This document shows, piece by piece, positions 422-27,745 of a stretch of 28,053 nt of DNA. Made by a program: the position numbers and the translations under genes. Position 1 is the first letter of the stretch. Every line of letters begins with the position of its first letter. Origin of the DNA: Macrostomum lignano (lineage: Eukaryota); contig NIVC01001146.1 of assembly GCA_002269645.1 (NCBI GenBank), positions 1-28,053 on the forward strand. Direction: 5' to 3'. The notes under the pieces are model-generated. The model was not told the DNA's origin. It made no database searches and saw only the letters and a program-made list of their open reading frames with translations.

Positions 422-1670
422 GCAGTAGCGCTCAAGCTGCCTCCATTTTAGGCCTCCCAGCCCCGAGCATGGTTTATCCAAGCCGAGGCTCAGTTTACAC
501 GTAGGGGCGCCACGCAGGACTCGACCAAATGCTACTATCAGCTGGTCGCAGCGCTAGACCACAGTTCGCAGAACGTTTCTTGGATGTTCTTGAGGACCCC
601 CCTACTGAAAACAAGTACGCATGGCAGTTGAAGGCTTGCCTGCTTGGCACTTTCGGTTTATCGAGGCAACGCATGGCGTTGGTCTCCGCGAATTTCAAGG
701 AGCCACGATCGTATTGTACCGGCCACTGGCGTTGGTCGTCGACAAGCCTGGCACTGCTAGTCGACAAGCCCAGCCAGGGGATTGCGTTGGTTCACCAGCC
801 TGTGGTCGCGGCCGCCCGTGAGAGTCGTGTCAACCGTTTCGATAGGGGTGAGCTACCACAGGGGTGAAGCCAGCGGTCTTTGCTTTTTTCTCAAGAAGTT
901 CGGCGCGAAGGCCAGGCGATGCGAAGCCCCGTGTAGGTTTCAGGGAAACGGGGCAGGCCAGCCGTCAGTGAACAGCTCGGCGGCCGGCAGCAGCAGTCTA
1001 CTCCTTGTCCCGGATCTCTGCAGACAGGCCGGCGTTTCCGTGTTGACACCGGTGCCGAAGCCAACATCTTTCCGATCACCGCGGAGCAGCCCAAATGCAG
1101 CGCCAAGGCCCACCGCTCAACGCAGCCAACGGTTGTCAAATCCGAACTTTTGGCACCGGCCCACCAGTTCACTCTGGACCTAGGCATCCGGCGTTGCTCT
1201 TGCCTATTCATTCTGGCTGCGGTTCAGCGACCGTTGATCGGCGCGGGTTTTCTCGGCATCATGGCCTGCTATGGACCTGCCGCATCGGCGTCTGCTCAAT
1301 GCTCGCGTGCACCTGATTGACAGCACGGGCCGGGCCTGTAGCTCACCGCAGCCGCCGCTGCGGACCCGTACAGCCTTGGTCAGCGCAAGAAAGCAGCGCT
1401 ACCTGGCCTATGTGTCCGAATTCAGCACGATTGTCCAACATGTGGCAGGCAAGGACAACGCAGCAGCGGACGCGCTCTCCGTTGCACGGTGGCTTCTGTT
1501 CAGCCCCAGTTGCTCCCTGGCGTTGATTTCATGGAATGGCCAAGGCGCAGCAGGCGGATCCAACAAACCAGACCAGCAGCAGTCTCAGCTAGCGCAGGTG
1601 CGATTTGGTCCCGGGTTGGATTTGTTGTGTGACAACTCCACCGTCCGGCCGTGGCCACTCGGCCGTGGCC
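422..1670 (+). mobile_element. Decayed, internally deleted Ty3/Gypsy LTR-retrotransposon fragment (gag, protease, RNase H C-terminus); no RT or integrase core seen
   Basis: Manual translation across frameshifts. Gag N-terminus AVALKLPPF*ASQPRAWFIQAEAQF from 422 (W to TAG at 449-451), then ERFLDVLEDPPTENKYAWQLKACLLGTFGLSRQ. Gag C-terminal motif LCFFLKKFGAKARRCEAPCRFQGN. Protease RRFRVDTGAEANIFP (DTGA at 1045-1056) and AANGCQIRTFG. RNase H end QRYLAYVSEFSTIVQHVAGKDNAAADALS, then LLCDNSTVRPWPL. Confidence 0.9.
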
Positions 1671-1820
1671 AATTGTCACTTGTAATTTTTCTGACAAATG
1701 ACTTCATGAAATCCACCGCAGGTGGCAATTTTTCTAGCAATGTTTAAAACTGGGTTGTTTCATTAACTCGAAATAGTTTCACGTCGTCAACCTAAAGAGG
1801 AATCTTGTGAAGTTTTAAAG

Positions 1821-2549
1821 CAGGGATCGGCAAACTCGACCGGACGGCAAAGCCTCTCTACGCTCGTATCCGGCGCACGGGTCTTTGAAACTTTACATTG
1901 GCAATCCGGCCCACTCAAGGCTTGTGTCTCTTCTCATCCCTCTTATCTCTAATCTCCTCTCTTTTCTCTCTTCTCTTCGATCTACTCTTCTCTCCTATTC
2001 TATATCTCCTATCTTCATAGATATGGATATTATGATATGGATTTTCGGCATGATATGGATTTTATGGTGGGTGGGGGAACAAAGGGCAGAATTCTACACG
2101 TACATGTACATTGTTTTCAGAATTAGTATTGCCAGCGCTCATTTTGGTGCCGCAGGCACTCATTTTAGCGCCGCATGCACTCATTTTAGCGCCGCATGCA
2201 CTCATTTTAGCGCTCCAGGCACTCATTTTAGCGCTGCAGGCACTCATTTTAGCGCCGCTGGTACTCATTTTAGCGCCTCAGGCACTGTGTTTTGTCGCCC
2301 TGAAGCAAAACTATTGATTTCCACAACGGGTCACAAGGTCGGGTGGATGACAAAGCATTGGCATGTCCCTCCCATAGCTTACTATATAGCAGGTCCCCCA
2401 CGGTGGCGACGCCTCTCTTCTTTATTCTCTCGCCTCTCCTTTCTCCTATCTCTTTTATCTCTTCTCTATTCCCTCTCCTCTCCCCTCCAGCGCAGTCATG
2501 CCCTAGGTTCTCTACCTAACATTGAGGTAAAAAACTTTGCCGACCCCTG
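1821..2549. mobile_element. Non-autonomous hAT-type DNA transposon (MITE-like), 729 bp
   Basis: Left end CAGGGATCGGCAAA (1821) and right end TTTGCCGACCCCTG (ending 2549) form a 14-bp TIR with 1 mismatch. Flanks TTTTAAAG (1813-1820) and T+TTTTAAAG (2550-2558) fit an 8-bp TSD with a one-base poly-T slip. No transposase motifs inside. Confidence 0.85.
2135..2286. repeat. 21-bp minisatellite (GCACTCATTTTAGCGCCGCAG), about 7 copies, inside the hAT element
   Basis: Read directly; explains the THFSAAG / MSACGAK repeat ORFs. Confidence 0.95.
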
Positions 2550-2704
2550 TTTTTAAAGGTTGAATGAAATATTCGAGCTTGTGAAAGCAGATCTTGACAA
2601 ACAGCCAATGAAACTTATAATATTGTCGATAATTTTATGTCGTAGAGGACAACAAAGTATATTCATAAACGAGTAGGATAATGCTCAACAAAATCAAAAT
2701 ATTA

Positions 2705-2710
2705 TTTATT
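2705..2710 (-). terminator. Candidate polyadenylation signal (AATAAA) of the metallothionein-like gene
   Basis: TTTATT on plus strand about 157 nt downstream of the stop at 2867. Confidence 0.55.
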
Positions 2711-2866
2711 GTATTACATTGAATTGATGGCGGCTTAAAGCGTTGCGATATGATGAATATTCACAACAAACAGCGGCATACATAGATAAGACAGACAGTA
2801 ACGATTAATTAGTATTCAATGTACGACACTAAGTCACTGGTTATAACAACAGTCTGCCAACAATTG

Positions 2867-3115
2867 TCACTCCGAGCAATGACAGTTGTTCCTTTTGCAA
2901 CACTCGCCACCGGGTGTGCAGCCTGTGCCGCATTTGCAAGCCTTATCCGACGCAGCAGTAGCAGCAGCGTTCTTGGCTCCACCGCAGCAGCCGCCGACGC
3001 TGGTAGCGGCTTCCGACTTCGCCGAGCATCCGCAGCCGTTCTTTTTGCAGCAATCGCCACCGGGTGTGCAATTGGGGCCGCATTTGCAATTTTGGCTACA
3101 CGATTTGCAGTCCAT
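2867..3115 (-). CDS. Metallothionein-like protein, 82 aa, 18 Cys, intronless
   Basis: MDCKSCSQNCKCGPNCTPGGDCCKKNGCGCSAKSEAATSVGGCCGGAKNAAATAASDKACKCGTGCTPGGECCKRNNCHCSE*. ATG at 3115 in good context (AAGATGG). CxC/CC motifs, Lys/Gly/Ser rich, no aromatic residues. The ORF-track start at 3172 is a non-ATG codon. Confidence 0.85.
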   Translation of the reverse strand: MDCKSCSQNCKCGPNCTPGGDCCKKNGCGCSAKSEAATSVGGCCGGAKNAAATAASDKACKCGTGCTPGGECCKRNNCHCSE

Positions 3116-3519
3116 CTTCAACTTCGGTAGGGAGTCAGCGAGTGAGCGAGAAGATTGTCTGGATTGGATCAAATTTTAAATTTATTTAAATCGATCCGTC
3201 GGAGCTCTAGCTAACAATGATAAATAGAGGTTACAGAAGGGCTGTTTTAAAGATAAGAAGTTGAGGAGGGACCTTCCTTGAAAGAATTAGCATCTCGCGG
3301 AGTGCTAAAAATAAACCCACTCCTCTGCCCTCAAGTGTACATTGGAGCGAGTAAAGAATTGGGGGTGTGAATTAGGGGGGACGGGTGGCAGGCGGCTACG
3401 GCGGGAATAGAGGTCACGTGATTTAGTTCCACGGCCAGTCCACGGGCCATTAGCTGACCAATAACTATAGGCTTGTCGCTTTCTCGTTGTCTCTAACCAT
3501 GGGAGTTCATATGTACAAT

Positions 3520-3526
3520 TGCACAC
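3520..3526 (+). promoter_or_regulatory. Metal-response-element core (TGCACAC, matches TGCRCNC) about 400 bp upstream of the metallothionein ATG
   Basis: Exact match to the MRE core consensus; a single 7-mer can occur by chance. Confidence 0.35.
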
Positions 3527-4136
3527 TCACTACTGGAACGAACTAGATAGACTTCAGGTTGTACATGTCTACGCGCCTACGCGCTTCTAATGCTCTCGCG
3601 CTCTGTACATTGCGCGATTAATTCTCTCAACTTGGGCTTCAGAGCCTCTCTCCGCCCTCGAATCGATCGATTTTGTCTTCCTCTCTTCCTCTCCCGTCCC
3701 CGTTCAAACTACTCTCGAAAGGCGAAGAAACATAAGGATTCTAGACTCTAGAGAATGAGAAGTTAATTAGAATGTAAAGAAGCCTCCGTCTGCAAGTGGC
3801 AGCCCACCCACGTAGCTATTAGTGGCTAGTACCATTTCTGAAATGTAGTTAAAAAATAAAGCTAGCCTTCATTTTTGTGCATCAAGTATTGCATTGAGCA
3901 CTATTAGTCAATTGTTGATTATTAGTATTTTGTTTTGATCATTCCATATCCCATGTACGAGTATATTAGTCGGCGTTTAAAACAAAAGTAAAGTTGATTT
4001 TTATTCGACTGCGCTTCTGGACAAGAGAGACATCAATTTCTTTTGATGAGATCATTAACAAAAAAGGGGCTGTCAATTTAAGCTCAAAAAGTGGAGCCCG
4101 AGTAACCTATGTATGTACACAAATGATACGTCATTC

Positions 4137-4920: not shown

Positions 4921-7900
4921 CTCTCTTCGATCCCTCTCTCTTCCATCTATCACCCTCTCTCCCCGATCTATCAACCTCTCTCCCTGATCTATCTCCCTCT
5001 CTCCCCGATCTCCCTCTCTCCCCGATCTATCTCCTCTCTCCCGATCTATCTCCCTCTCTCCCCGATCTATCTCCCTCTCTCCCCGATCTATCTCCCTCTC
5101 TCCCCGATCTATCTCCCTCTCTCCCCGATCTATCTCCCTCTCTCCCCGATCTATCTCCCTCTCTCCCCGATCTATCTCCCTCTCTCCCGATCTATCTCCC
5201 TCTCTCCCCGATCTATCTCCCTCTCTCCCCGATCTATCTCCCTCTCTCCGATCTATCTCCCTCTCTCCCCGATCTATCTCCCTCTCTCCCCGATCTATCT
5301 CCCTCTCTCCCCGATCTATCTCCCTCTCTCCCCGATCTATCTCCCTCTCTCGATCTATCTCCCTCTCTCCCCGATCTATCTCCCTCTCTCCCCGATCTAT
5401 CTCCCTCTCTCCCCGATCTATCTCCCCTCTCCCGATCTATCTCCCTCTCCTTCGATCTATCTCCCTCTCTCTTCGATCTATCTCCCCTCTCCCCGATCTA
5501 TCTCCCTCTCTCCCCGATCTATCTCCCTCTCTCCCCGATCTATCTCCCTCTCTCCCCGATCTATCTCCCTCTCTCCCCGATCTATCTCCCCTCTCCCCGA
5601 TCTATCTCCCTCTCTCCCCGATCTATCTCCCTCTCTCCCCGATCTATCTCCCCTCTCCCCGATCTATCTCCCTCTCCCGATCTATCTCCCCCTCTCCCCG
5701 ATCTATCTCCCCCTCTCCCCGATCTATCTCCCTCTCTCCCCGATCTATCTCCCTCTCTCCCCGATCTATCTCCCTCTCTCTTCGATCTATCTCCCTCTCT
5801 CCCCGATCTATCTCCCTCTCCCCGATCTATCTCCCTCTCTCCCGATCTATCTCCCTCTCTCCCGATCTATCTCCCTCTCTCCCCGATCTATCTCCCTCTC
5901 TCCCAATCTATCTCCCTCTCTCCCCGATCTATCTCCCTCTCTCCCCGATCTATCTCCCTCTCCCCCGATCTATCTCCCTCTCTCCCCGATCTATCTCCCT
6001 CTCTCCCCGATCTATCTCCCTCTCTCCCCGATCTATCTCCCTCTCTCCCCGATCTATCTCCCTCTCTCCCCGATCTATCTCCCTCTCTCCCCGATCTATC
6101 TCCCTCTCTCCCCGATCTATCTCCCTCTCTCCCCGATCTATCTCCCTCTCTCCCCGATCTATCTCCCTCTCTCCCCGATCTATCTCCCTCTCTCCCCGAT
6201 CTATCTCCCTCTCTCCCCGATCTATCTCCCTCTCTCCCCGATCTATCTCCCTCTCTCCCATCTATCTCCCTCTCTCCCCGATCTATCTCCCTCTCTCCCC
6301 GATCTATCTCCCTCTCTCCCCGATCTATCTCCCTCTCTCCCCCGATCTATCTCCCTCTCTCCCCGATCTATCTCCCTCTCTCCCCGATCTATCTCCCTCT
6401 CTCCCCGATCTATCTCCCTCTCTCCCCGATCTATCTCCCTCTCCCCCGATCTATCTCCCTCTCTCCCCGATCTATCTCCCTCTCTCCCCGATCTATCTCC
6501 CTCTCTCCCCGATCTATCTCCCTCTCTCCCCGATCTATCTCCCTCTCTCCCCGATCTATCTCCCTCTCTCCCCGATCTATCTCCCTCTCTCCCCGATCTA
6601 TCTCCCTCTCTCCCCGATCTATCTCCCTCTCTCCCCGATCTATCTCCCTCTCTCCCCGATCTATCTCCCTCTCCCCGATCTATCTCCCTCTCCCCCGATC
6701 TATCTCCCTCTCTCCCCGATCTATCTCCCTCTCTCCCCGATCTATCTCCCTCTCTCCCCGATCTATCTCCCTCTCTCCCCGATCTATCTCCCTCTCTCTT
6801 CGATCTATCTCCCTCTCTCCGATCTATCTCCCTCTCTCCCCGATCTATCTCCCTCTCTCCCCGATCTATCTCCCTCTCTCCGATCTATCTCCCTCTCTCC
6901 CGATCTATCTCCCTCTCTCCCCGATCTATCTCCCTCTCTCCCCGATCTATCTCCCTCTCTCCCCGATCTATCTCCCTCTCCCCGATCTATCTCCCTCTCT
7001 CCCAATCTATCTCCCTCTCTCCCCGATCTATCTCCCTCTCTCCCCGATCTATCTCCCTCTCCCCCGATCTATCTCCCTCTCTCCCCGATCTATCTCCCTC
7101 TCTCCCCGATCTATCTCCTCTCTCCCCGATCTATCTCCCTCTCTCCCCGATCTATCTCCCTCTCTCCCCGATCTATCTCCCTCTCTCCCCGATCTATCTA
7201 TCTCCCTCCTCTCCCCGATCTATCTCCCTCTCTCCCCGATCTATCTCTCTCTCCCCGATCTATCTCCCTCTCTCCCCGATCTATCTCCCCTCTCCCGATC
7301 TATCTCCCTCTCTCCGATCTATCTCCCTCTCCCCCGATCTATCTCCCTCTCTCCCCGATTTATCTCCCTCTCTCTTCGATCTATCTCCCTCTCTCCCCGA
7401 TCTATCTCCCTCTCTCCCCGATCTATCTCCCTCTCCCCCGATCTATCTCCCTCTCTCCCCAATCTATCTCCCTCTCTCCCCGATCTATCTCCCTCTCTCC
7501 GATCTATCTCCCTCTCCCCGATCTATCTCCCTCTCCCCGATTTATCTCCCTCTCTCTTCGATCTATCTCCCTCTCTCCCCGATCTATCTCCCTCTCTCCC
7601 CGATCTATCTCCCTCTCTCTCGATCTATCTCCCTCTCTCCCCAATCTATCTCCCTCTCTCCCCGATCTATCTCCCTCTCTCCCCGATCTATCTCCCTCTC
7701 TCCCCGATCTATCTCCCTCTCCCCCGATCTATCTCCCTCTCTCCCCAATCTATCTCCCTCTCTCCCCAATCTATCTCCCTCTCTCCCCGATCTATCTCCC
7801 TCTCTCCCCGATCTATCTCCCTCTCCCCCGATCTATCTCCCTCTCTCCCCGATCTATCTCCCTCTCTCCCCGATCTATCTCCCTCTCTCCCCGATCTATC

Positions 7901-10900
7901 TCCCTCTCTCCCCGATCTATCTCCCTCTCTCCCCGATCTATCTCCCTCTCTCCCCGATCTATCTCCCTCTCTCCCCAATCTATCTCCCTCTCTCCCCGAT
8001 CTATCTCCCTCTCTCCCCGATCTATCTCCCTCTCTCCCCGATCTATCTCCCTCTCTCCCCGATCTATCTCCCTCTCTCCCCGATCTATCTCCCTCTCTCC
8101 CCCATCTATCTCCCTCTCTCCCCGATCTATCTCCCTCTCTCCCCGATCTATCTCCCTCTCTCCCCGATCTATCTCCCTCTCTCCCCCATCTATCTCCTCT
8201 CTCTCGATCTATCTCCCTCTCTCCCCGATCTATCTCCCTCTCTCCCCGATCTATCTCCCTCTCTCCCCGATCTATCTCCCTCTCTCCCCAATCTATCTCC
8301 CTCTCTCCCCGATCTATCTCCCTCTCTCCCCGATCTATCTCCCTCTCCCCCGATCTATCTCCCTCTCTCCCCGATCTATCTCCCTCTCTCTTCGATCTAT
8401 CTCCCTCTCTCCCCGATCTATCTCCCTCTCTCCCCGATCTATCTCCCTCTCTCTTCGATCTATCTCCCTCTCTCCCCAATCTATCTCCCTCTCTCCCGAT
8501 CTATCTCCCTCTCTCCCCGATCTATCTCCCTCTCTCCCCGATCTATCTCCCTCTCTCCCGATCTATCTCCCTCTCTCCCCGATCTATCTCCCTCTCTCTT
8601 CGATCTATCTCCCCCTCTCCCCGATCTATCTCCCTCTCTCCCCGATCTATCTCTCTCTCTCCCCGATCTATCTCCCTCTCTCCCCGATCTATCTCCCCCT
8701 CTCCCCGATCTATCTCCCTCTCTCCCCGATCTATCTCCCTCTCCCCGATCTATCTCCCTCTCTCCCCGATCTATCTCCCTCTCTCTTCGATCTATCTCCC
8801 TCTCTCCCCGATCTATCTCCCTCTCTCCCCGATCTATCTCCTCTCTCTTCGATCTATCTCCCTCTCTCCCCAATCTATCTCCCTCTCTCCCCGATCTATC
8901 TCCCTCTCTCCCAATCTATCTCCCTCTCTCCCCGATCTATCTCCCTCTCTCCCCGATCTATCTCCCTCTCTCCCCGATCTATCTCCCTCTCTCCCCGATT
9001 TATCTCCCTCTCTCTTCGATCTATCTCCCTCTCTCCCCGATCTATCTCCCTCTCTCCCCGATCTATCTCCCTCTCTCTTCGATCTATCTCCCTCTCTCCC
9101 CAATCTATCTCCCTCTCTCCCCGATCTATCTCCCTCTCTCCCCGATCTATCTCCCTCTCCCCCGATCTATCTCCCTCTCTCCCCGATCTATCTCCCTCTC
9201 TCCCGATCTATCTCCCTCTCTCTTCGATCTATCTCCCCTCTCCCCGATCTATCTCCCTCTCTCCCCGATCTATCTCTCTCTCCCCGATCTATCTCCCTCT
9301 CTCCCCGATCTATCTCCCCTCTCCCCGATCTATCTCCCTCTCTCCCCGATCTATCTCCCTCTCCCCGATCTATCTCCCTCTCTCCCCGATCTATCTCCCT
9401 CTCTCCCGATCTATCTCCCTCTCTCCCCGATCTATCTCCCTCTCTCCCCGATCTATCTCCCTCTCCCCCGATCTATCTCCCTCTCTCCCCAATCTATCTC
9501 CCTCTCTCCCGATCTATCTCCCTCTCTCCCCGATCTATCTCCCTCTCCCCGATCTATCTCCCTCTCTCCCGATCTATCTCCCTCTCTCCCCGATCTATCT
9601 CCCTCTCTCTTCGATCTATCCCTCTCCCCGATCTATCTCCCTCTCTCCCCGATCTATCTCCCCCTCTCCCCGATCTATCTCCCCCTCTCCCCGATCTATC
9701 TCCCTCTCTCCCTGATCTATCTCCCTCTCTCCCCGATCTATCTCCCTCTCTCCCCGATCTATCTCCCTCTCCCCCGATCTATCTCCCTCTCTCCCCAATC
9801 TATCTCCCTCTCTCCCCAATCTATCTCCCTCTCTCCCGATCTATCTCCCTCTCTCCCCGATCTATCTCCCTCTCTCCCCGATCTATCTCCCTCTCTCCCC
9901 GATCTATCTCCCTCTCTCCCCGATCTATCTCCCTCTCTCGCCGATCTATCTCCCTCTCTCCCCGATCTATCTCCCTCTCTCCCCGATCTATCTCCCTCTC
10001 TCCCCGATCTATCTCCCTCTCTCCCCAATCTATCTCCCTCTCCCCCGATCTATCTCCCTCTCTCCCCGATTTATCTCCCTCTCTCTTCGATCTATCTCCC
10101 TCTCTCCCCGATCTATCTCCCTCTCTCCACGATCTATCTCCCTCTCTCTTCGATCTATCTCCCTCTCTCCCAATCTATCTCCTCTCTCCCCGATCTATCT
10201 CCCTCTCTCCCCGATCTATCTCCCTCTCTCCCCGATCTATCTCCCTCTCTCCCCGATCTATCTCCCTCTCTCCCCGATCTATCTCCCTCTCTCTTCGATC
10301 TATCTCCCCCTCTCCCCGATCTATCTCCCTCTCTCCCCGATCTATCTCTCTCTCCCCGATCTATCTCCCTCTCTCCCCGATCTATCTCCCCCTCTCCCCG
10401 ATCTATCTCCCTCTCTCCCCGATCTATCTCCCTCTCCCCCGATCTATCTCCCTCTCTCCCCGATCTATCTCCCTCTCTCTTCGATCTATCTCCCTCTCTC
10501 CCCGATCTATCTCCCTCTCTCCCCGATCTATCTCCCTCTCTCTTCGATCTATCTCCCTCTCTCCCCAATCTATCTCCCTCTCTCCCGATCTATCTCCCTC
10601 TCTCCCCAATCTATCTCCCTCTCTCCCCGATCTATCTCCCTCTCTCCCCGATCTATCTCCCTCTCCCCCGATCTACCTCCCTCTCTCCCCGATTTATCTC
10701 CCTCTCTCTTCGATCTATCTCCCTCTCTCCCCGATCTATCTCCCTCTCTCCCCGATCTATCTCCCTCTCTCCCCGATCTATCTCCCTCTCTCCCCAATCT
10801 ATCTCCCTCTCTCCCCGATCTATCTCCCTCTCTCCCCGATCTATCTCCCTCTCCCCCGATCTATCTCCCTCTCTCCCCGATCTATCTCCCTCTCTCCCCC

Positions 10901-12439
10901 ATCTATCTCCCTCTCTCTTCGATCTATCTCCCCCTCTCCCCGATCTATCTCTCTTTCTCCCCGATCTATCTCTCTCTCTCCCCGATCTATCTCCCTCTCT
11001 CCCCGATCTATCTCCCCCTCTCCCCGATCTAACTCCCTCTCTCCCCGATCTATCTCCCTCTCTCTTCGATCTATCTCCCCCTCTCCCGATCTATCTCCCT
11101 CTCTCCCCGATCTATCTCCTCTCTCCCCGATCTATCTCCCTCTCTCCCCGATCTATCTCCCCTCTCCCCGATCTATCTCCCTCTCTCCCCGATCTATCTC
11201 CCTCTCCCCCGATCTATCTCCCTCTCCCCCGATCTATCTCCCTCTCCCCGATCTATCTCCCTCTCTCCCCGATCTATCTCCCTCTCTCCGATTATCTCCC
11301 TCTCTCTTCGATCTATCTCCCTCTCTCCCCGATCTATCTCCCTCTCTCCCCGATCTATCTCCCTCTCTCTTCGATCTATCTCCCTCTCTCCCCAATCTAT
11401 CTCCCTCTCTCCCCGATCTATCTCCCTCTCTCCCCGATCTATCTCCCTCTCTCCCCGATCTATCTCCCTCTCTCCCCGATCTATCTCCCTCTCTCCCCGA
11501 TCTATCTCCCTCTCTCTTCGATCTATCTCCCTCTCTCCCGATCTATCTCCCTCTCTCCCCGATCTATCTCTCTCTCTCCCGATCTATCTCCTCTCTCCCG
11601 ATCTATCTCCCCTCTCCCCGATCTATCTCCCTCTCTCCCCGATCTATCTCCCTCTCCCCCGATCTATCTCCCTCTCTCCCCGATCTATCTCCCTCTCTCT
11701 TCGATCTATCTCCCTCTCTCCCCGATCTATCTCCCTCTCTCCCCGATCTATCTCCCTCTCTCTTCGATCTATCTCCCTCTCTCCCCAATCTATCTCCCTC
11801 TCTCCCCGATCTATCTCCCTCTCTCCCCAATCTATCTCCCTCTCTCCCCGATCTATCTCCCTCTCTCCCCGATCTATCTCCCTCTCTCCCCGATCTATCT
11901 CCCTCTCTCCCCGATTTATCTCCCTCTCTCTTCGATCTATCTCCCTCTCTCCCCGATCTATCTCCCTCTCTCCCCGATCTATCTCCCTCTCTCCCCGATC
12001 TATCTCCCTCTCTCCCCAATCTATCTCCCTCTCTCCCCGATCTATCTCCCTCTCTCCCCGATCTATCTCCCTCTCCCCCGATCTATCTCCCTCTCTCCCC
12101 GATCTATCTCCCTCTCTCCCCCATCTATCTCCCTCTCTCTTCGATCTATCTCCCCCTCTCCCCGATCTATCTCTCTCTCTCCCCGATCTATCTCTCTCTC
12201 TCCCCGATCTATCTCCCTCTCTCCCCGATCTATCTCCCCCTCTCCCCGATCTATCTCCCTCTCTCCCCGATCTATCTCCCTCTCCCCCGATCTATCTCCC
12301 TCTCTCCCCGATCTATCTCCCTCTCTCTTCGATCTATCTCCCTCTCTCTTCGATCTATCTCCCTCTCTCCCCGATCTATCTCCCTCTCTCTTCGATCTAT
12401 CTCCCTCTCTCTTCAATCTATCTCCCTCTCTCTCCGATC
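4921..12439. repeat. 7.5-kb polypyrimidine satellite, 21-bp unit GATCTATCTCCCTCTCTCCCC, roughly 360 copies
   Basis: Read directly; frequent 1-2 nt indels plus recurring variants (CTTCGAT, CCCAAT, GATTT). Source of all GEREIDR / GREGDRS ORFs. Confidence 0.98.
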
Positions 12440-14442: not shown

Positions 14443-15914
14443 ACTCAGGTGACAGACATCCTGTACTCAGATACTCAGGTGTGATTGCAGACATCCTGCA
14501 CTCATACTCAGGTGTGATTGCAGACATCCTGCACTCAGATGCTCAGGTGTGATTGCAGACATCCTGCACTCAGATACTCAGGTGTGATTGCAGACATCCT
14601 GCTCTCGGAGACTCAGGTGTGATTGCAGACATCCTGCACTCTGATACTCAGGTGGGATTGATTGCAGACATCCTGCACTCAGATGCTCAGGTGTGATTGC
14701 AGACATCCTGTACTCAGATACTCAGGTGTGATTGCAGACATCCTGCACTCAGATGCTCAGGTGTGATTGCAGACATCCTGCACTCTGATACTCAGGTGTG
14801 ATTGCAGACATCCTGCTCTCGGAGACTCAGGTGTGATTGCAGACATCCTGCACTCTGATACTCAGGTGGGATTGATTGCATACATCCTGCACTCAGATGC
14901 TCAGGTGTGATTGCAGACATCCTGTACTCAGATACTCAGGTGTGATTGCAGACATCCTGCACTCTGATACTCAGGTGTGATTGATTGCAGACATCCTGCA
15001 CTCAGATACTCAGGTGTGATTGATTTCAGACATCCTGCACTCAGATACTCAGGTGTGATTGCAGACATACTGCACTCAGATACTCAGGTGTGATTGATTG
15101 CAGACATCCTGCACTCTGATACTCAGGTGTGATTTCAGACATCCTGCACTCTGATACTCAGGTGTGATTTCAGACATCCTGCACTCTGATACTCAGGTGT
15201 GATTTCAGACATCCTGCACTCAGATACTCAGGTGTGATTGCAGACATCCTGCACTCAGATACTCAGGTGTGATTGATTGCAGACATCCTGCACTCAGATA
15301 CTCAGGTGGGATTGCAGACATCCTGCACTCAGATACTCAGGTGGGATTGCAGACATCCTGCACTCAGATGCTCAGGTGTGATTGCAGACATCCTGCACTC
15401 AGATACTCAGGTGTGATTTCAGACATCCTGCACTCAGATACTCAGGTGTGATTTCAGACATCCTGCACTCTGATACTCAGGTGTGATTGCAGACATCCTG
15501 CACTCAGATACTCAGGTGTGATTGCAGACATCCTGCACTCAGATACTCAGGTGTGATTGATTGCAGACATCCTGCACTCAGATACTCAGGTGTGATTGAT
15601 TGCAGACATCCTGCACTCTGATACTCAGGTGTGATTGCAGACATCCTGCACTCAGATGCTCAGGTGTGATTGATTGCAGACATCCTGCACTCAGATACTC
15701 AGGTGGGATTGCAGACATCCTGCACTCAGATACTCAGGTGGGATTGCAGACATCCTGCACTCAGATGCTCAGGTGTGATTGATTGCAGACATCCTGCACT
15801 CAGATACTCAGGTGGGATTGCAGACATCCTGCACTCAGATACTCAGGTGGGATTGCAGACATCCTGCACTCTGATACTCAGGTGTGATTGCAGACATCTC
15901 GCACTCAGATGCTC
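14443..15914. repeat. 35-bp (variant 39-bp) minisatellite GCAGACATCCTGCACTCAGATACTCAGGTGTGATT, about 41 copies
   Basis: Read directly; the 39-bp variant carries an extra GATT. Confidence 0.97.
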
Positions 15915-16137
15915 ATTTTTAGCTGAAATGACATACAACACCTCAAATTAGCCGTGATAAGGACTTTAGTTGCGCAAACCATCCCATATTAGTATATTTG
16001 CTACAGTTTTAGAACTTTTTTCCAGTTGTCAGGCGTACTGAACTTTCAACCGTCTGATAACACCGAAATTGTGACAAACAGAACGTCTTCTAAGTTCAGC
16101 TGCACTTCAGCTACTTGAAGACTCCTTCGTTTGTAAT

Positions 16138-16607
16138 TTAGTACATAGAAGGCTCTTCCTGAACAATAGCTGATCGCTTGCCGAATCTGGCGTAGCCGCG
16201 CTTCCCGAATCTGGTGTAGCCGCGCTTCCCGAATCTGGCGTAGCCGCGCTTCCCGAATCTGGCGTAGCCGCGCTTCCCGAATCTGGCGTAGCCGCGCTTC
16301 CCGAATCTGGCGTAGCCGCGCTTCCCGAATCTGGTGTAGCCGCGCTTCCCGAATCTGGCGTAGCCGCGCTTCCCGAATCTGACGTAGCCGCGCTTCCCGA
16401 ATCTGACGTAGCCGCGCTTCCCGAATCTGGTGTAGCCGCGCTTCCCGAATCTGGTGTAGCCGCGCTTCCCGAATCTGGTGTAGCCGCGCTTCCCGAATCT
16501 GGCGTAGCCGCGCTTATCCAACGTGTCAAAGTCTCTTAGCAAACGCGTTTGTACGACGTCGCTATCTGCCAAAGAAAAAGTTCCATAGCTGTTGACATTT
16601 GGCTGCA
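16138..16607 (-). CDS. FMRFamide-like (GYxRFamide) neuropeptide precursor, last coding exon: 14 copies of GY[A/T/V]RF-G-KR
   Basis: After ...DTLDKR there are 7 GYARF, 5 GYTRF and 2 GYVRF, each followed by GKR (amidation Gly plus dibasic cleavage). Phase-1 acceptor GTCTGTAG ending at 16608 joins in frame to the signal exon. TAA at 16138-16140. Confidence 0.95.
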
Positions 16608-16733
16608 CTACAGACAGCGACTGCGACTAAGGAAAGCAAAGCAATAACCCTAACCCCATCCCTTAGCATAAACAAAAAACAAAAAACTAAAACCGAGTAC
16701 CAAACAATTCATGTGGGTAATAAAAAGTGTCAC

Positions 16734-16812
16734 CTGTATCTTCTTGCGCAAGCGACGGCGCGCTGAAGAACGCAATCAGCACCGCGGCCAGCAGGCCCCA
16801 CAGAAAGTTCAT
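16734..16812 (-). CDS. Signal-peptide exon of the GYxRFamide precursor (MNFLWGLLAAVLIAFFSAPSLA-QEDT); spliced product 182 aa
   Basis: ATG at 16812, hydrophobic core and S-L-A cleavage motif. Phase-1 donor AG/GTGACA at 16733. The 126-nt intron (16608-16733) gives 79+470=549 nt in frame. An alternative phase-1 donor (GTACTC) further on cannot be excluded. Confidence 0.85.
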
Positions 16813-16903: not shown

Positions 16904-17407
<504 letters not shown>

Positions 17408-17706: not shown

Positions 17707-17727
17707 CAGACAGACAGACAGACAGAC

Positions 17728-17786
<59 letters not shown>

Positions 17787-17796
17787 CGACACAGAC

Positions 17797-17872
<76 letters not shown>
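17707..17872. repeat. (AGAC)n microsatellite between the two divergent genes
   Basis: Read directly. Confidence 0.98.
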
Positions 17873-19328: not shown

Positions 19329-19641
19329 CCTCTCCTCTCCTCTCGTCTCCTCTCCTCTCCTCTCCTCTCCTCTCCTCTCCTCTCGTCTCCTCTCCTCTCC
19401 TCTCGTCTCCTCTCCTCTCCTCTCCTCTCCTCTCCTCTCCTCTCCTCTCCTCTCCTCTCCTCTCCTCTCCTCTCCTCTCCTCTCCTCTCCTCTCCTCTCC
19501 TCTCCTCTCCTCTCGTCTCCTCTCTTCTCCTCTCCTCTCCTCTCCTCTCCTCTCCTCTCCTCTCCTCTCCTCTCCTCTCCTCTCCTCTCCTCTCCTCTCC
19601 TCTCCTCTCCTCTCCTCTCCTCTTCTCTCCTCTCCTCTCCT
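19329..19641. repeat. (TCTCC)n microsatellite in rabphilin intron 2
   Basis: Read directly. Confidence 0.98.
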
Positions 19642-20842
19642 CAGTACTCCCCTCTCTCCCCTGTCTCTACACACTCTCTTTTTTTCCTCTCTTCTATCCT
19701 GCTCTCCTTACTCTTCACTGATCCCTAGCTAGTATGTTGTGCTCACCTGTCAATAAACTACTCATTGTTTTCAATTTTGTCAGATTTTTTATTTTAACTA
19801 TTCGCTCACAGTCGCCCTGGCAACAAAGTCAGTCTACTTAGCTAGCATTTTCTCAATGAACCGTGGCCTCTGCCGGAATCTACGAGTACTCTACTCTCTT
19901 CTCCATTTCCCAGCGCCAGCAAGCACTGAATCCTACTTTGTCCATCAGTCAATTACTTAAAGCTTTTGTCCCGCACCCTTAAAACGGCGATTGTGTCCTT
20001 CTAAGCTAATTGGAGTTTTGCTCGGTTGACTAGTTTGAGTAAATTGTGACTCCCCTGATGGGCCCGAGCTCGAAGCCTGCTAAAAGCCTTAAAAGTACCG
20101 ACCATTGTCGCCATAAAATGTCAAGCAATTCAAAGCCATGAAGAGAAATTGCTTTTCTCTGTTGAGCTTTCCCGCGGTTCAAGAGGACTGGAAGAGGCCG
20201 GGGCATCCACCCCACGTAGCTTACAATATTACTCATAATCTTATATGCATTTAGCCAATGTCGTATGACCATTGCCATCTAGCTATCTTCTAGTTTGCTT
20301 GTCCTAGTGTGTGAGTGTCTTGAATGTCTTAGTCACTCAGTGTCTTTAGAGTCTTATAGTCTTAATGTCTTACGATTACTATTCTTTATAGATTAATATT
20401 TCCGGTGACCTCTAGTAAAAACTCAGTCTAAAGCTACACACTAAACAAAAAGTAAAGAGTTTTTCTTAAAGACCACCTTGATAAGTTTTTTTGGCTTATT
20501 TTCTCCTTCTCCTTGTTCTCCTTCCATCCTCTCCGTTTGTCTTCTTTCACTTCCTTTCCCCTTTTCCTCTTCGTAGCCATGGGGCACCATTTTTGCTATT
20601 GGCGCTTGACCACTCTAATGGTGAGTTGCATATAATGAATAACAAAAGTTGTTGGCGCTGGTCTATCTATAGTACGAGACGACTTACAAGACCCACCTGG
20701 ATTGGTCGCGTAGTTGTGAATTGATTCGCAAACCTCATCGTCGGTATTAATCCGCACACACACGGCCCTGGCTCAGTCCCTACGCTTTCGTGTTTTAGTG
20801 TCTGACTGTCTGTCTGAGCGTTTTATTGCCATCAAGTCTTCC

Positions 20843-21980: not shown

Positions 21981-23060
21981 TGTCTCACTCTCCCCCTGTC
22001 TCACTCTCCCCCCTGTCTCACTCTCCCCCCTGTCTCACTCTCCCCCCTGTCTCACTCTCCCCTCTCCCTGTCTCCCTCTCCCTGTCTCCCTCTCCCTGTC
22101 TCCCTCTCCCTGTCTCCCTCTCCCTGTCTCCCTCTCCCTGTCTCCCTCTCCCTGTCTCCCTCTCCCCCTGTCTCCCTCTCCCTGTCTCCCTCTCCCTGTC
22201 TCCCTCTCCCCCTGTCTCACTCTCCCTGTCTCACTCTCCCCCTGTATTCCTCTCCGTCTCCCTCTCCCTGTCTTCGTCTCCCTGTCTCCCTCTCCCTGTC
22301 TCCCTCTCCCTGTCTCCCTCTCCTTTTCTCCTTCCTCCTTTCTCCCTCCTCCTGTCTTCCTCCCCCTGTCTCCCTCCCCCTGTCTCCCTCCCCCTGTCTC
22401 CCTCCCCCTGTCTCCCTCTCCCTGTCTCCCTCTCCCTGTCTCCCTCTCCCTGTCTCCCTCTCCCTGTCTCCCTCTCCCTGTCTCCCTCTCCCTGTCTCCC
22501 TCTCCCTGTCTCACTCTCCCCCTGTATTCCTCTCCGTCCCCCTCTACCTGTCTCCCTCTCCTTGTCTCCTTCCTCCTTTCTCCCTCTCCCTGTCTCCCTC
22601 TCCCTGTCTCCCTCTCCTGTCTCCCTCTCCCGGTCTCCCTTTCCCTATCTTCCTCTACCTGTCTCCCTCTCCCCTGTCTCTCTCTCCCCTGTCTCCCTCT
22701 CCCCTGTCTCCCTCTCCCTGTCTCCCTCTCCTGTCTCCCTCTCCCGGTCTCCCTTTCCCTATCTTCCTCTACCTGTCTCCCTCTCCCCTGTCTCTCTCTC
22801 CCCTGTCTCTCTCTCCCCTGTCTCCCTCTCCCCTGTCTCCCTCTCCCCTGTCTCCCTCTCCCCTGTCTCCCTCTCCCCTGTCTCCCTCTCCCCTGTCTCC
22901 CTCTCCCTGTCTCCCTCTCCTGTCTCCCTCTCCCGGTCTCCCTTTCCCTATCTTCCTCTACCTGTCTCCCTCTCCCCTGTCTCTCTCTCCCCTGTCTCTC
23001 TCTCCCTGTCTCCCTCTCCCCTGTCTCCCTCTCCCACAGTCCCCTACCCTCTCCCTATCA
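21981..23060. repeat. CT-rich compound minisatellite (CTCCCTGTCTCCCT family) in rabphilin intron 3
   Basis: Read directly; contains larger internal duplicated blocks (near 22600-23000). Confidence 0.95.
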
Positions 23061-23394: not shown

Positions 23395-23718
23395 GTAACT
23401 CTTTTAATCCGGTTTTTTGCGGTAAAAAATTTGATTTTTTTGTCTAAGTATATCGACAGATAAAAACTCAAAAATTCTTCAAAAACCATTTTTTTCGACG
23501 CTACTTAATCATAAGCAAGTAAACTCCTTTTCGAATAAGCACTGCATAAAATAAACATCCTAGGATATCGACATAAAGAAACATATACAGTTAAACTGCC
23601 TATCAAATTAACTCTCATTTAATCATAAAATTGATCCGATAAACTCTATTAGATTAACATGCTGTTGAATGGTTTCCAATATTTCCAATATCCAACATTC
23701 CGTTGGATAGGAAAATTA

Positions 23719-24292
23719 TTAGATAAACACCCTATTGGATAAACACCATATTAGATAAACACCCTATTGGATAAACACCCTATTGGATAAACACCCTATT
23801 AGATAAACACCCTATTGGATAAACACCCCCTTGGATAAATACCCTATTGGATAAACACCCTATTGGATAAACACCCCCTTGGATAAATACCCTAATAGAT
23901 AGACACCCTATTAGATAAACACCATATTAGATAAACACCCTATTGGATAAACACCCTATTGGATAAACACCCTATTGGATAAACACCCTATTGGATAAAC
24001 ACCATATTGGATAAATACCCTAATAGATAGACACCCTATTAGATAAACACCCTATTTGATAAACATCCTATTGGATAAACATCCTATTGGATAAACACCC
24101 CCTTGGATTGACATCGTGTTAGATAAACGTCCTATTGGATAAACACCTCATTGGATAAACATCCTATTGGATAAACACCCCATTGGATTGGATAAACACC
24201 CCGTTAGATAAACATCCTATTAAATAAACATCCTGTTCAATAAACACCCTATCAAATAAACACCCGATCAAATAAACACCCGATCAAATAAA
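23719..24292. repeat. 16-bp minisatellite (GGATAAACACCCTATT), about 35 copies, rabphilin intron 4
   Basis: Read directly. Confidence 0.95.
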
Positions 24293-24535: not shown

Positions 24536-24851
24536 GTAAGAATACCGACTGCTGTTATTTCTACTTACAGTAGGCAGTGCCTCATTTGCACGGTTCGGGG
24601 GAAAAATACAATTTTGGAAAATTAACTTACAGATAAAGGATAGAAGCTTTTGGCGAAATTCACAGAACAGAGCAGTAGAAAGCGCGCCCGACTCTCGCGC
24701 CACGTGACAACTTGGTTGATCCCGTGCGCGGCCGTATTCATTTGGCGCCGGCCAAAAATGAACGCGAAAAACCAGAAATAAAAGTACATTCACAAAGTAT
24801 ACCTGCACAAGAAGGTGCATCAGAAAGGCGCAAGATGAAACACCGGGTGAA

Positions 24852-25373
24852 TTAAGGAGGCGCCGGGTGCATCAAGGAAGCGCCATGGGAGATCAAGAAA
24901 GCGCCATGGGAGATCAAGGAAGCGCCATGGGGGATCAAGGAAGCGCCATCGGAGATCAAGGAGGCTCCAGGTGCATCAAGGAAGCGCCATGGGAGATCAA
25001 GGAGACGCCAGGTGCATCTAGGAGGGTGCCAGGTGCATCTAGGAGGGCGCCAGGTGCATCTAGGAGGGCGCCAGGTGCATCAAGCAAGGAACCAAGTACA
25101 TTAAGGAGGCGCCAGGTGCATCAAGGAAGCGCCATCGGAGATCAAGGAGGCGCCAGGTGCATCAAAGAAGCGCCATCGGAGATCAAGGAGGCGCCAGGTG
25201 CATCAAGGAAGCGCCATGGGAGATCAAGGAGGCGCCAGGTGCATCAAGGAAGCGCCATCGGAGATCAAGGAGGCGCCAGGTGCATCAAGGAAGCGCCATG
25301 GGAGATCAAGGAGGCGCCAGGTGCATCAAGGAAGCGCCATGGGAGATCAAGGAGGCGTCAGGTGCATCAAGGA
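24852..25373. repeat. 41-bp minisatellite built from 20+21-bp subunits (GGAGGCGCCAGGTGCATCAA + GGAAGCGCCATSGGAGATCAA)
   Basis: Read directly; left part has monomer runs, right part regular dimers. Confidence 0.93.
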
Positions 25374-26865: not shown

Positions 26866-27297
26866 CCGATTCAGGCGCCGTCCTGACCCCCATTCAGGCG
26901 CCGTCCGACCCCATTCAGGCGCCGTCCTGACACCGATTCAGGCGCCGTCCTGACACTTATTTAAACGCCGTCCTGACACTTATTTAAACGCCGTCCTGAC
27001 ACTTATTTAAACGCCGTCCTGACACTTATTTAAACGCCGTCCTGACACTTATTTAAACGCCGTCCTGACTCTTATTTAAACACCGTCCTGACACTTATTT
27101 AAACGCTGTCCTGACACTTATTTAAACACCATCCTGACACTTATTTAAACACCGTCCTGACACTTATTTAAACGCCGTCCTGACACTTATTTAAACGCCG
27201 TCCTGACACTTATTTAAACACCCGTCCTGACACTTATTTAAACGCCGTCCTGACACTTATTTAAACGCTGTCCTGACACTTATTTAAACGCCGTCCT
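26866..27297. repeat. 23-bp minisatellite (ACACTTATTTAAACGCCGTCCTG), about 18 copies
   Basis: Read directly; grades from a GC-rich CAGGCGCCGTCCTGAC variant at the left edge. Confidence 0.95.
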
Positions 27298-27601: not shown

Positions 27602-27745
27602 GTAGGGATGCAGGGAGCTCGGCCTTAGCTGATCCATTTCTACCTGCTCAATGATTGTTACCTTTAGCCCGTGTCTATTTTTAATGTGCACCAAACTATT
27701 GTACATTCATCGTACTTAAGTGCACTTGCTCTATAAGCGCAGGAG

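What the first reader, a model, noticed from the sequence alone, without database searches (positions are those of the whole stretch)
2867..3115. Unusual internally duplicated two-domain metallothionein (9+9 Cys)
The motif CKCGxxCTPGG[D/E]CCKxNxCxCS occurs twice, exactly 150 bp apart, with DNA identity still visible (TCGCCACCGGGTGTGCA). The N-half has CxxC plus 7 Cys. The C-half has an isolated GGCCGG in an Ala-rich linker plus 7 Cys and a His. Two 9-Cys halves suggest two M3Cys9 (beta-type) clusters. I do not recognise this spacing from a named MT family, and to my knowledge flatworm MTs are poorly characterised.
Basis: partly seen in the sequence, partly recalled or inferred. Interest (0 to 1): 0.72.

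Follow-up and report, generated by a model that had tools for sequence, protein, structure and literature searches.

The report
Flatworm metallothionein-like gene, two β1-like halves
This is a real, intact gene of the flatworm Macrostomum lignano, annotated only as hypothetical, that encodes an 82-residue cysteine-rich protein which looks like a metal-binding metallothionein; its cysteine pattern resembles the "β1" domain of mollusc metallothioneins, and no flatworm metallothionein gene turned up in my literature searches.

Summary
Window 3115..2867 (minus strand) is an intact 82-codon ORF with 18 Cys (22%), no aromatic residues, one His and no signal peptide. A 22-residue 7-Cys motif occurs twice, exactly 150 nt apart (68 nt, 79% identical). 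The window is contig NIVC01001146.1 of Macrostomum lignano. The genome holds three nearly identical copies. One carries the transcriptome-derived GenBank model BOX15_Mlig008448g3, named "hypothetical protein".

No database homologue, Pfam family or PDB sequence matches. These searches are also nearly blind to genuine metallothioneins. The new point is that the N-half spacing, Cx2Cx3CxCx3Cx5CCx4CxC, is one step from the mollusc β1 domain, [CxC]x3-6[CxC]x3Cx5[CxC]x3[CxC]. Seven of nine Cys coincide without gaps with snail β1 domains of solved structure, and CKCG..CT is shared. The similarity is moderate (empirical p about 0.0004 to 0.009). It is absent against vertebrate, crustacean and mollusc β3 domains, but partly shared with sea-urchin domains.

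Best reading: a cytosolic metallothionein with two β1-like units, predicted to bind about 5-6 divalent ions. Metal binding, metal induction and homology to β1 are untested. I rate it a new variant of a known kind, of moderate interest.

The parts
2867..3115 (-). Complete single-exon CDS (82 codons plus TGA) of the metallothionein-like protein. ATG is at 3115-3113 in a good Kozak context (gAAGATGG); the stop codon is at 2869-2867.
   Evidence: The identical CDS lies on NIVC01001789.1, and a 98% identical 83-aa copy (P0001, BOX15_Mlig008448g3) lies on NIVC01000051.1.
3098..3109 (-). N-terminal Cys pair C3-K-S-C6 (CxxC). It occupies the position of the first [CxC] of a β1 domain.
   Evidence: The spacer to the core is x3 here and x4 in P0001. 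In molluscs this same spacer is the most variable one (x3-6).
3023..3088 (-). First copy of the 7-Cys core, residues 10-31: CKCGPNCTPGGDCCKKNGCGCS.
   Evidence: Direct repeat. Codon comparison. Alignment to snail β1 domains.
2939..3022 (-). Ala/Gly/Ser-rich linker of 28 residues (AKSEAATSVGGCCGGAKNAAATAASDKA). The AlphaFold2 model has low confidence here. The DNA is GCN-rich and of low complexity.
   Evidence: pLDDT is below 50 for residues 29-60. Short repeat D2, CTGCTGCG(G/T)..GGA, occurs 32 nt apart and therefore in two different frames.
2984..2989 (-). Linker CC doublet (Cys43-Cys44, TGCTGC). It may supply the 8th and 9th ligands of the C-half, or it may be incidental.
   Evidence: 15 residues before the next Cys.
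2873..2938 (-). Second copy of the 7-Cys core, residues 60-81: CKCGTGCTPGGECCKRNNCHCS. It includes His79 (2879-2881). The protein ends one residue after the core, two residues after the last Cys.
3171..3190 (-). A+T-rich TATA-like element (TTTAAATAAATTTAAAATTT), 56-75 nt upstream of the ATG, followed by ...CCAATCCAG at 3159-3167. This could be a core promoter or a trans-splice acceptor. It is inferred only.
   Evidence: Read directly and conserved in L001. No transcription-start or trans-splicing data were available.
2705..2710 (-). AATAAA polyadenylation signal, 157 nt downstream of the stop codon (inferred 3' UTR of about 170-190 nt).
   Evidence: Read directly and conserved in L001.
3520..3526 (+). 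The only MRE-core match (TGCACAC) in the 1 kb upstream, 405 nt before the ATG. It is not above chance. Two further matches (2914-2920 and 3064-3070) are just the Cys-Thr-Pro codons of the CDS.
   Evidence: About 0.3 matches per kb are expected; most of the 49 window hits lie in a 35-nt minisatellite.

Best explanation
The gene encodes a small cytosolic metallothionein of the free-living flatworm Macrostomum lignano. Its 18 cysteine thiolates, and possibly His79, would wrap d10 metal ions (Zn2+, Cd2+ or Cu+) into two metal-thiolate clusters, buffering essential metals and sequestering toxic ones.

The N-half (residues 3-30, 9 Cys) is a slightly altered β1-type domain of the kind found at the C-terminus of mollusc MTs. 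The first CxC has become CxxC and the third CxC has become CC. By analogy it should form an M(II)3Cys9 cluster.

The C-half arose by internal duplication of the 7-Cys core. It would complete its cluster with the linker Cys43-Cys44 and/or His79, or else hold a smaller cluster. That gives about 5-6 divalent ions per molecule.

Shown here: the ORF, its composition, the duplication, preservation of every Cys, three genomic copies, a transcriptome-derived gene model, and a moderately significant resemblance to β1. Inferred: metal binding, stoichiometry, cytosolic location, physiological role and common descent with β1.
For: (1) Composition and anatomy are those of an MT. The protein has 82 aa, 22% Cys arranged in CxC, CC and CxxC motifs, 9 Lys, no aromatic residue, one His and a non-hydrophobic N-terminus. 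This fits the definition quoted in PMC7826182 (15-30% Cys, under 100 aa, CxC/CC motifs).

(2) It is a real gene. The 98% identical paralogue is GenBank model BOX15_Mlig008448g3. The NIVC01 annotation was built from the RNA-seq-based Mlig_RNA_3_7_DV1 'coregenes' transcriptome. Three loci keep the ORF intact, and the only length change is an in-frame Ser codon. The ATG context is good and an AATAAA lies downstream.

(3) The Cys residues appear to be under selection. In the internal repeat, 6 of 6 non-synonymous changes avoid Cys, and both changes in Cys codons are synonymous.

(4) The N-half resembles β1. Its spacing vector is at L1 distance 3 from mollusc β1 and 12-17 from β2 or β3. Random Cys placement gives p=0.0004 for β1 and 0.0012 for any of 11 mollusc 9-Cys patterns (patterns). 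An ungapped overlay on Littorina 5ML1 and Helix 6QK5 β1 domains gives 7 of 9 coincident Cys plus shared K2, K9, G11 and T15. Smith-Waterman against composition-preserving shuffles gives p 0.002-0.009. hhalign gives probability 87-90%, and only 1 of 400 column shuffles reaches the observed score, in either direction. Vertebrate α and β, crustacean βN and βC, and mollusc β3 controls give z of 1.3 or less.

(5) The β1 pattern is reported as identical in chelicerate and myriapod MT1 and proposed to be ancient in bilaterians (PMC13168519), so finding it in a flatworm is plausible.

(6) The 2024 review of M. lignano toxicology reports lethality only above 330 uM Cd but above 10 uM Cu (PMC11641670). 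That is compatible with a Cd-sequestering system, but it is circumstantial.
Against: No homologue other than the M. lignano paralogue was found in 5.8 billion or 1.8 billion proteins. There is no Pfam hit even at E<=10 and no PDB metallothionein by sequence. The value of these negatives is limited. Mytilus versus Littorina MTs reach only E=0.0015 in the small PDB set, and a β1 profile recovers nothing at E<=0.01 in the large database.

The β1 similarity is only moderate, about p=0.003 per test before correcting for roughly 12 comparisons. Sea-urchin domains also score z 2.2-3.9, so convergence from a shared CKC/GC 'grammar' cannot be excluded.

The Cys content of 22% is at the low end for MTs because of the 28-residue linker. 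The C-half lacks the first Cys pair at the expected distance.

There is no MRE cluster upstream. I had no expression level, tissue or metal-induction data, and found no Logan or RNA-seq contig carrying the protein. AlphaFold2 gives no confident fold (mean pLDDT 49); this is my expectation for an apo-MT and is uninformative.
Confidence: 0.55

Rival explanations
1. It is a functional metallothionein-like metal binder, but it arose within the flatworm or Macrostomum lineage (de novo, or from low-complexity GC-rich DNA) and then duplicated internally. On this view the likeness to mollusc β1 is convergence, imposed by the geometry of an M3Cys9 cluster and the common CKC/CxC grammar.
For: No sequence relative exists outside M. 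lignano. De novo origin of MT domains is documented in molluscs and chelicerates. Sea-urchin domains also give raised z-scores. The linker is visibly built from GCN repeats read in different frames. The similarity statistics are moderate.
Against: Seven of nine Cys coincide without gaps over the full 28-residue span. The variable spacer sits at the same place as in molluscs (x3 versus x4 between the M. lignano copies; x3-6 in molluscs). CKCG..CT identities add to this. The β2, β3, vertebrate and crustacean patterns are far more distant.
Confidence: 0.25
2. It is a Cys-rich protein with a non-MT role, for example a redox buffer, a structural or cross-linked component (germline, eggshell or sperm, as with keratin-associated or protamine-like Cys-rich proteins), or a zinc-ribbon-like interaction module.
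For: No family assignment could be made. Cys content is lower than in classic MTs. The net charge is positive, with 9 Lys plus 1 Arg against 6 acidic residues. No metal-responsive promoter signature was found.
Against: There is no signal peptide, no aromatic residue and no hydrophobic core, so a fold stabilised without metal is unlikely. The CxC/CC motif pattern and the β1-like spacing are typical of cluster-forming MTs, not of disulfide-rich or structural proteins.
Confidence: 0.12
3. It is not a functional protein-coding gene. It could be a chance or decaying ORF in a repeat-rich region, or the true product could be the codon-aligned antisense ORF (2819-3130, plus strand, 103 aa, Ala-rich).
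For: The window is packed with minisatellites. A full-length antisense ORF exists. The three copies are too similar (95-98%, flanks included) for dN/dS to discriminate.
Against: The GenBank gene model is on the minus strand and derives from a transcriptome. AATAAA and the Kozak context are on the minus strand. The antisense ORF is the expected by-product of a Cys(TGC)-rich frame with few Leu or TCA codons, because TGC reads as GCA (Ala) on the other strand. All 8 changed codons between the repeats would be non-synonymous in the antisense frame, whereas the sense frame keeps every Cys. The ORF also has the highest Cys fraction of 158 ORFs.
Confidence: 0.08

Closest known systems
Mollusc metallothionein β1 domain, [CxC]x3-6[CxC]x3Cx5[CxC]x3[CxC]. 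Examples are the C-terminal domains of Littorina littorea MT (PDB 5ML1) and Helix pomatia Cd-MT (PDB 6QK5). The classical 'family 2' signature is C-x-C-x(3)-C-T-G-x(3)-C-x-C-x(3)-C-x-C-K (signature recalled from memory).
   Same: Both have nine Cys over the same 28-residue span, and 7 of 9 Cys positions coincide without gaps. Both share the block C-K-C-G-x-x-C-T. The variable spacer follows the first Cys pair in both. Both domains end the protein 1-2 residues after the last CxC. In snails each such domain binds three Cd2+/Zn2+ through nine thiolates (established knowledge, from memory).
   Different: The first pair is CxxC, not CxC. The third pair is CC followed by x4, instead of CxC followed by x3. 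The sequence reads TPGG instead of TGP. Here the unit is tandemly duplicated, with a 28-residue Ala-rich linker, whereas mollusc linkers are mostly 2-10 residues. No α, β2 or β3 partner domain is present. No Pfam or phmmer match was obtained.
Chelicerate/myriapod MT1 (D1a/D1b bidomain)
   Same: PMC13168519 states that the D1b Cys pattern is identical to mollusc β1 and proposes a pre-bilaterian origin. The flatworm N-half would be a third phylum-level occurrence of that pattern.
   Different: I did not have arthropod sequences to compare directly. Arthropod MT1 pairs a β2-like domain with a β1-like domain, whereas this protein repeats the β1-like unit.
Crustacean MTs (lobster 1J5L/1J5M, blue crab 1DMC/1DME)
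   Different: The Cys spacing differs, with at most 5-6 coincident Cys and z<=1.3 against shuffles. Crustacean MTs have no long linker (sequences; the two domains abut, from memory) and no internal sequence repeat.
Sea-urchin MTA domains (1QJK/1QJL)
   Same: Local CKCxxGC words give raised alignment z-scores of 2.2-3.9.
   Different: Only 4-5 Cys coincide, the alignments need gaps, and the overall pattern is different.

Membership tests
Metallothionein superfamily (operational definition) | Small size (under 100 aa) and high Cys content (about 15-30%) | tested here: met
   82 aa with 18 Cys, or 22%. Definition as quoted in PMC7826182.
Metallothionein superfamily (operational definition) | Cys arranged in CxC, CC or CxxC motifs; no or very few aromatic residues and few His | tested here: met
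   4 CxC, 3 CC and 1 CxxC motifs; no F/W/Y; 1 His. The aromatic/His criterion is the classical definition, recalled from memory.
Metallothionein superfamily (operational definition) | Intracellular protein with no secretion signal | tested here: met
   The N-terminus MDCKSCSQN has no hydrophobic stretch. This was checked by inspection only.
Metallothionein superfamily (operational definition) | Binds d10 metals in metal-thiolate clusters | not testable with these tools
   This needs recombinant protein with ESI-MS, ICP and CD. The AlphaFold2 model without metals is unconfident (pLDDT 49).
Metallothionein superfamily (operational definition) | Expressed, usually metal- or stress-inducible | tested here: inconclusive
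   The gene model derives from an RNA-seq-based annotation. No expression values were available. Only one MRE core lies upstream, at chance level.
Mollusc-type β1 domain (Calatayud et al. 2021) | Nine Cys arranged as [CxC]x3-6[CxC]x3Cx5[CxC]x3[CxC] | tested here: inconclusive
   The N-half is Cx2C-x3-CxC-x3-C-x5-CC-x4-CxC. Seven of nine positions are exact and two are shifted by one residue (L1 distance 3, p about 0.0004). The C-half has only the last 7 Cys in register.
Mollusc-type β1 domain (Calatayud et al. 2021) | Detectable sequence similarity to β1 domains beyond composition | tested here: inconclusive
   Smith-Waterman shuffles give p 0.002-0.009. hhalign gives probability 87-90% with 1 of 400 column shuffles reaching the score. 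The result is specific against 8 control domains, but sea-urchin domains also score. Only two verified β1 sequences plus one from memory were available.
Mollusc-type β1 domain (Calatayud et al. 2021) | Located at the C-terminus, following a different N-terminal domain (α, β2, β3, γ or δ) | tested here: not met
   Here both halves are β1-like, and no other domain type is present.
Curated MT families in Pfam | Match to any Pfam-A model | tested here: not met
   0 families at E<=10. HMMER's bias correction removes most of the score of Cys-rich proteins: bias was 49.8 bits.

The most novel reading that the evidence does not exclude
The β1-type 9-Cys cluster domain is ancestral to Spiralia, or to Bilateria as proposed in PMC13168519, and survives in altered and tandemly duplicated form in the early-branching free-living flatworm Macrostomum. 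Parasitic flatworms are said to have no MT genes and to rely on phytochelatin synthase (PMC3561135). On this reading they lost it secondarily. That would give the first sequence-defined platyhelminth MT family and date the MT loss within the phylum.
Probability: 0.3. Interest if true: 0.6.

Novelty: new variant of a known kind. Interest (0 to 1): 0.45.

Why it matters
[quoted passage not shown] Platyhelminthes are a gap in that picture. Parasitic flatworms are reported to lack MT genes (PMC3561135). The one planarian review I read mentions MT upregulation without giving any gene sequence. A 2024 review of M. lignano as a toxicology model does not mention MTs at all.

A sequence-defined candidate in M. 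lignano makes the question directly testable, because that review describes it as the only flatworm with stable transgenesis and RNAi works in it (my own knowledge). Does a flatworm use an MT for Cd, Zn or Cu handling? If the β1 resemblance reflects descent, it would add a third phylum to the proposed ancient β1 domain and imply secondary loss in Neodermata. If the resemblance is convergent, this is another clean case of lineage-specific MT birth plus internal duplication. Either way the gain is incremental for biology at large and of real interest mainly to MT and flatworm specialists.

Tried and rejected
- **Homologue searches.** The search for homologous proteins with the full protein returned only the M. 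lignano paralogue. An exhaustive phmmer over 1.84 billion representatives returned that paralogue plus P0002, a 968-aa repetitive junk ORF that I rejected on inspection.
- **Curated libraries.** Pfam at E<=10 gave no family. PDB phmmer at E<=10 gave only chance hits to NDUFA11 and CO dehydrogenase.
- **Collecting mollusc MTs with a β1 profile.** No candidate scored E<=0.01. I therefore left the third search unused, because one search had shown only one word-sharing candidate for this protein.
- **Getting β1 sequences from papers.** No sequences or supplements were held as text. I used verified PDB sequences instead.
- **Metal-response elements.** One upstream hit is at chance level. The excess of 49 hits in the window comes from a 35-nt minisatellite.
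- **Bacterial promoter/terminator scan.** It is irrelevant for a eukaryote.
- **AlphaFold2.** Mean pLDDT was 49 and pTM 0.24, so I did not attempt a fold search.
- **Transcript contigs.** A look-up of the exact protein found only the three genome loci of the one assembly, and no Logan or RNA-seq contigs.
- **Literature search for gene id Mlig008448.** No paper mentions it.
- **Whole-domain duplication hypothesis.** I considered a 40-aa unit (Cys pair plus core) with a later 30-nt GCN insertion. MDCKSCSQN and GGCCGGAKN share C at position 3 and N at position 9. By my own hand count of the sequence the DNA identity there is only about 41%, which is not distinguishable from chance, so I dropped the idea.

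Full report
**Observation**

The stretch 2867-3115 is the reverse complement of an intact ORF. It translates to MDCKSCSQNCKCGPNCTPGGDCCKKNGCGCSAKSEAATSVGGCCGGAKNAAATAASDKACKCGTGCTPGGECCKRNNCHCSE*. The protein has 82 residues, 18 Cys (22%), 13 Gly, 10 Ala, 9 Lys, no Phe/Trp/Tyr and one His.

The repeat finder gives a single strong direct repeat, 2872-2939 versus 3022-3089: 68 nt, 79% identical, exactly 150 nt apart. This corresponds to the 22-residue motif CKCGxxCTPGG[DE]CCKxNxCxCS at residues 10-31 and 60-81.

It is not a chance ORF. It has the highest Cys fraction of the 158 stop-to-stop ORFs of 60 aa or more in the window. In the 66 nt of the two motif copies, 14 nt differ. The six non-synonymous codon changes all fall on non-Cys positions, and the only two changes inside Cys codons are synonymous TGC/TGT.

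**Origin and gene status**

The only database relative is an 83-aa "hypothetical protein BOX15_Mlig008448g3" of Macrostomum lignano, 98% identical. An exact-sequence look-up shows that the window is contig NIVC01001146.1 (28,053 nt) of assembly GCA_002269645.1. The identical CDS also lies on NIVC01001789.1.

With NIVC01000051.1 (L001) that makes three loci. Their flanks are 93-98% identical to each other. The assembly paper describes extensive duplication in this genome, so three copies are not surprising.

The copies differ in the CDS by one in-frame Ser codon, one S31L change and one synonymous Cys change. They are too similar to give dN/dS information.

The GenBank annotation of this assembly was derived from the RNA-seq-based, boundary-refined transcriptome Mlig_RNA_3_7_DV1 "coregenes" (PMC5730564). 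The gene model is therefore indirect evidence of a transcript.

On the coding strand the ATG has A at -3 and G at +4. An A+T-rich TATA-like block lies 56-75 nt upstream. An AATAAA lies 157 nt after the stop.

The full-length plus-strand ORF (2819-3130) is codon-aligned antisense. It is the expected by-product of a TGC-rich frame, because TGC reads as GCA (Ala) on the other strand.

**Failed family searches, and why they mean little**

Pfam gives nothing even at E<=10. PDB phmmer gives only chance hits. The exhaustive phmmer search gives only the paralogue and a junk repeat ORF.

Calibration shows that these tools barely see true MTs. A bivalve MT against snail MTs reaches only E=0.0015-0.02 in the small PDB set, with about 50 bits removed as compositional bias. 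A three-sequence mollusc profile recovers nothing at E<=0.01 in the 5.8-billion-protein database. "Orphan" status therefore cannot be concluded.

**Resemblance to the mollusc β1 domain**

Table 1 of Calatayud et al. (PMC7826182) gives the 9-Cys β1 domain, conserved in all eight mollusc classes, as [CxC]x3-6[CxC]x3Cx5[CxC]x3[CxC]. The flatworm N-half is Cx2C-x3-CxC-x3-C-x5-CC-x4-CxC.

Laid without gaps on the β1 domains of Littorina littorea MT (5ML1, [29 protein letters not shown]) and Helix pomatia Cd-MT (6QK5), both sequences taken, the result is as follows:
- Seven of nine Cys coincide over the same 28-residue span.
- The other two Cys are displaced by one residue.
- K2, K9, G11 and T15 are shared (CKCG..CT).

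The spacer that differs between the M. lignano copies (x3 versus x4) is the one that varies most in molluscs (x3-6).

The statistics are consistent with each other:
- **Spacing distance.** L1 distance is 3 to β1, against 12-17 to β2 and β3. Random placement of 9 Cys gives p=0.0004 for β1, and 0.0012 for any of 11 mollusc patterns.
- **Smith-Waterman against composition-preserving shuffles.** p is 0.002-0.009 for the N-half and 0.002-0.03 for the C-terminal core.
- **hhalign.** Probability is 87-90%, and only 1 of 400 column-shuffled controls reaches the observed score in either direction.
- **Control domains with verified PDB sequences.** Rat β and α, lobster and crab βN and βC, and snail β3 give z<=1.3. 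Sea-urchin α and β give z 2.2-3.9 through local CKCxxGC words, but with only 4-5 coincident Cys.

The similarity is therefore real but moderate, and not fully specific. A 2026 paper reports the β1 pattern as identical in chelicerate and myriapod MT1 and proposes that it predates bilaterian diversification (PMC13168519). That makes a flatworm occurrence plausible.

**The second half and the linker**

Only the 7-Cys core is visibly duplicated at the DNA level. The C-half lacks a Cys pair 3-6 residues before its core. Its two extra Cys are the doublet Cys43-Cys44, 15 residues upstream, in a 28-residue Ala/Gly/Ser linker.

The linker DNA is GCN-rich. The motif CTGCTGCG occurs twice, 32 nt apart, and so in two different frames. 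It reads Cys-Cys in one frame and Ala-Ala in the other (family D2). The "9+9" symmetry is therefore less secure than "9 + 7 (+2, +His79)".

AlphaFold2 with the two-sequence alignment gives mean pLDDT 49, with the linker below 50. That is what I would expect for an apo-MT, it is uninformative, and I did not run a fold search.

**Mechanism proposed**

The protein is a cytosolic metallothionein. The N-half would fold around an M(II)3Cys9 cluster, as snail β1 domains do (established knowledge, from memory). The C-half would form a second cluster, using either the linker CC folding back and/or His79, or a smaller cluster.

The predicted load is about 5-6 Zn2+/Cd2+ per molecule, and more for Cu+. 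Its function would be metal buffering and detoxification.

The only circumstantial support is that M. lignano is reported to die above 330 uM Cd but already above 10 uM Cu (review PMC11641670).

No MTF-1-type regulation is indicated. One MRE core lies at -405, at chance level, and two more lie inside the CDS, where they are simply Cys-Thr-Pro codons.

**Rivals**
- A lineage-specific MT, convergent on β1 (0.25).
- A non-MT Cys-rich protein (0.12).
- A non-functional or antisense ORF (0.08).

**What is known**

Searches combining metallothionein with flatworm, Platyhelminthes, Macrostomum, planarian or Dugesia found no described flatworm MT gene. [quoted passage not shown] A planarian review mentions MT upregulation without gene-level detail. 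The 2024 M. lignano toxicology review never mentions MTs.

**Verdict**

This is a genuine gene, annotated but uncharacterised. It is most likely a metallothionein built from two β1-like units, and I found no sequence-defined flatworm MT described before it. I rate it a new variant of a known kind, with interest 0.45. The decisive tests are read mapping, a search for orthologues across flatworms, metal stoichiometry of the recombinant protein, and RNAi with metal challenge in M. lignano.

Noticed in passing
window 16138-16812, minus strand (tandem repeat 16175-16515): This looks like an FMRFamide-like neuropeptide precursor gene. A 24-nt tandem repeat (14.2 copies, 97% match) encodes KR-GY[A/T/V]RF-G units: GYARF x7, GYTRF x5 and GYVRF x2. 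After dibasic cleavage and Gly amidation these would give GYxRFamides, close to the planarian GYIRFamide (from memory). About 80 nt upstream on the same strand is an ORF, 16812-16687, starting with a textbook signal peptide (MNFLWGLLAAVLIAFFSAPSLA/QED...). I could not find a canonical in-phase GT-AG splice joining the two ORFs. There is no Pfam hit. The same array is present in L001 at about 3460-3752.
   Followed up: partly
window 4931-12439: A giant 21-nt minisatellite (TCCCTCTCTCCCCGATCTATC, about 363 copies, 93% match) causes the extreme GC and AT skew of 5-12 kb. From the BLAST coordinates, the homologous array in the paralogous locus L001 is much shorter, roughly 2 kb. Array length therefore differs strongly between the duplicated loci.
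   Followed up: partly
window 14453-15915: A 35-nt minisatellite of about 41 copies carries TGCACTC in every unit. This accounts for most of the apparent excess of metal-response-element cores in the window (49 found against 9 expected). It is a trap for motif counting.
   Followed up: yes
window 2819-3130, plus strand: A 103-aa Ala-rich ORF lies exactly codon-aligned antisense to the MT-like CDS. It is a mirror artefact of a TGC-rich frame (TGC read as GCA), not a second gene.
   Followed up: yes
window 2138-2286, and ORF 1885-2556 plus strand: A 21-nt tandem repeat (7 copies) lies about 600 nt downstream of the MT-like gene. In one frame it encodes THFSAAG repeats. It gives weak tblastn noise with the MT linker (E=0.01) and is probably non-coding.
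   Followed up: no
window 782-1747, plus strand: Two ORFs of 133 and 158 aa. The second contains ...VAGKDNAAADALS..., a motif I recall from LTR-retrotransposon pol proteins, which suggests a decayed transposon fragment. No significant Pfam hit was found.
   Followed up: partly
window 16904-17407, 17707-17872, 19329-19642, 22060-23035, 23717-24281, 24846-25373, 26920-27297, 27744-28052: There are many further micro- and minisatellites: (TATC)126, (CAGA)42, (CCTCT)63, and units of 14, 16, 21/41, 23 and 16/49 nt. Apart from the MT-like gene and the neuropeptide-like gene, I recognised no other gene among the ORFs of 130 aa or more in the contig.
   Followed up: no
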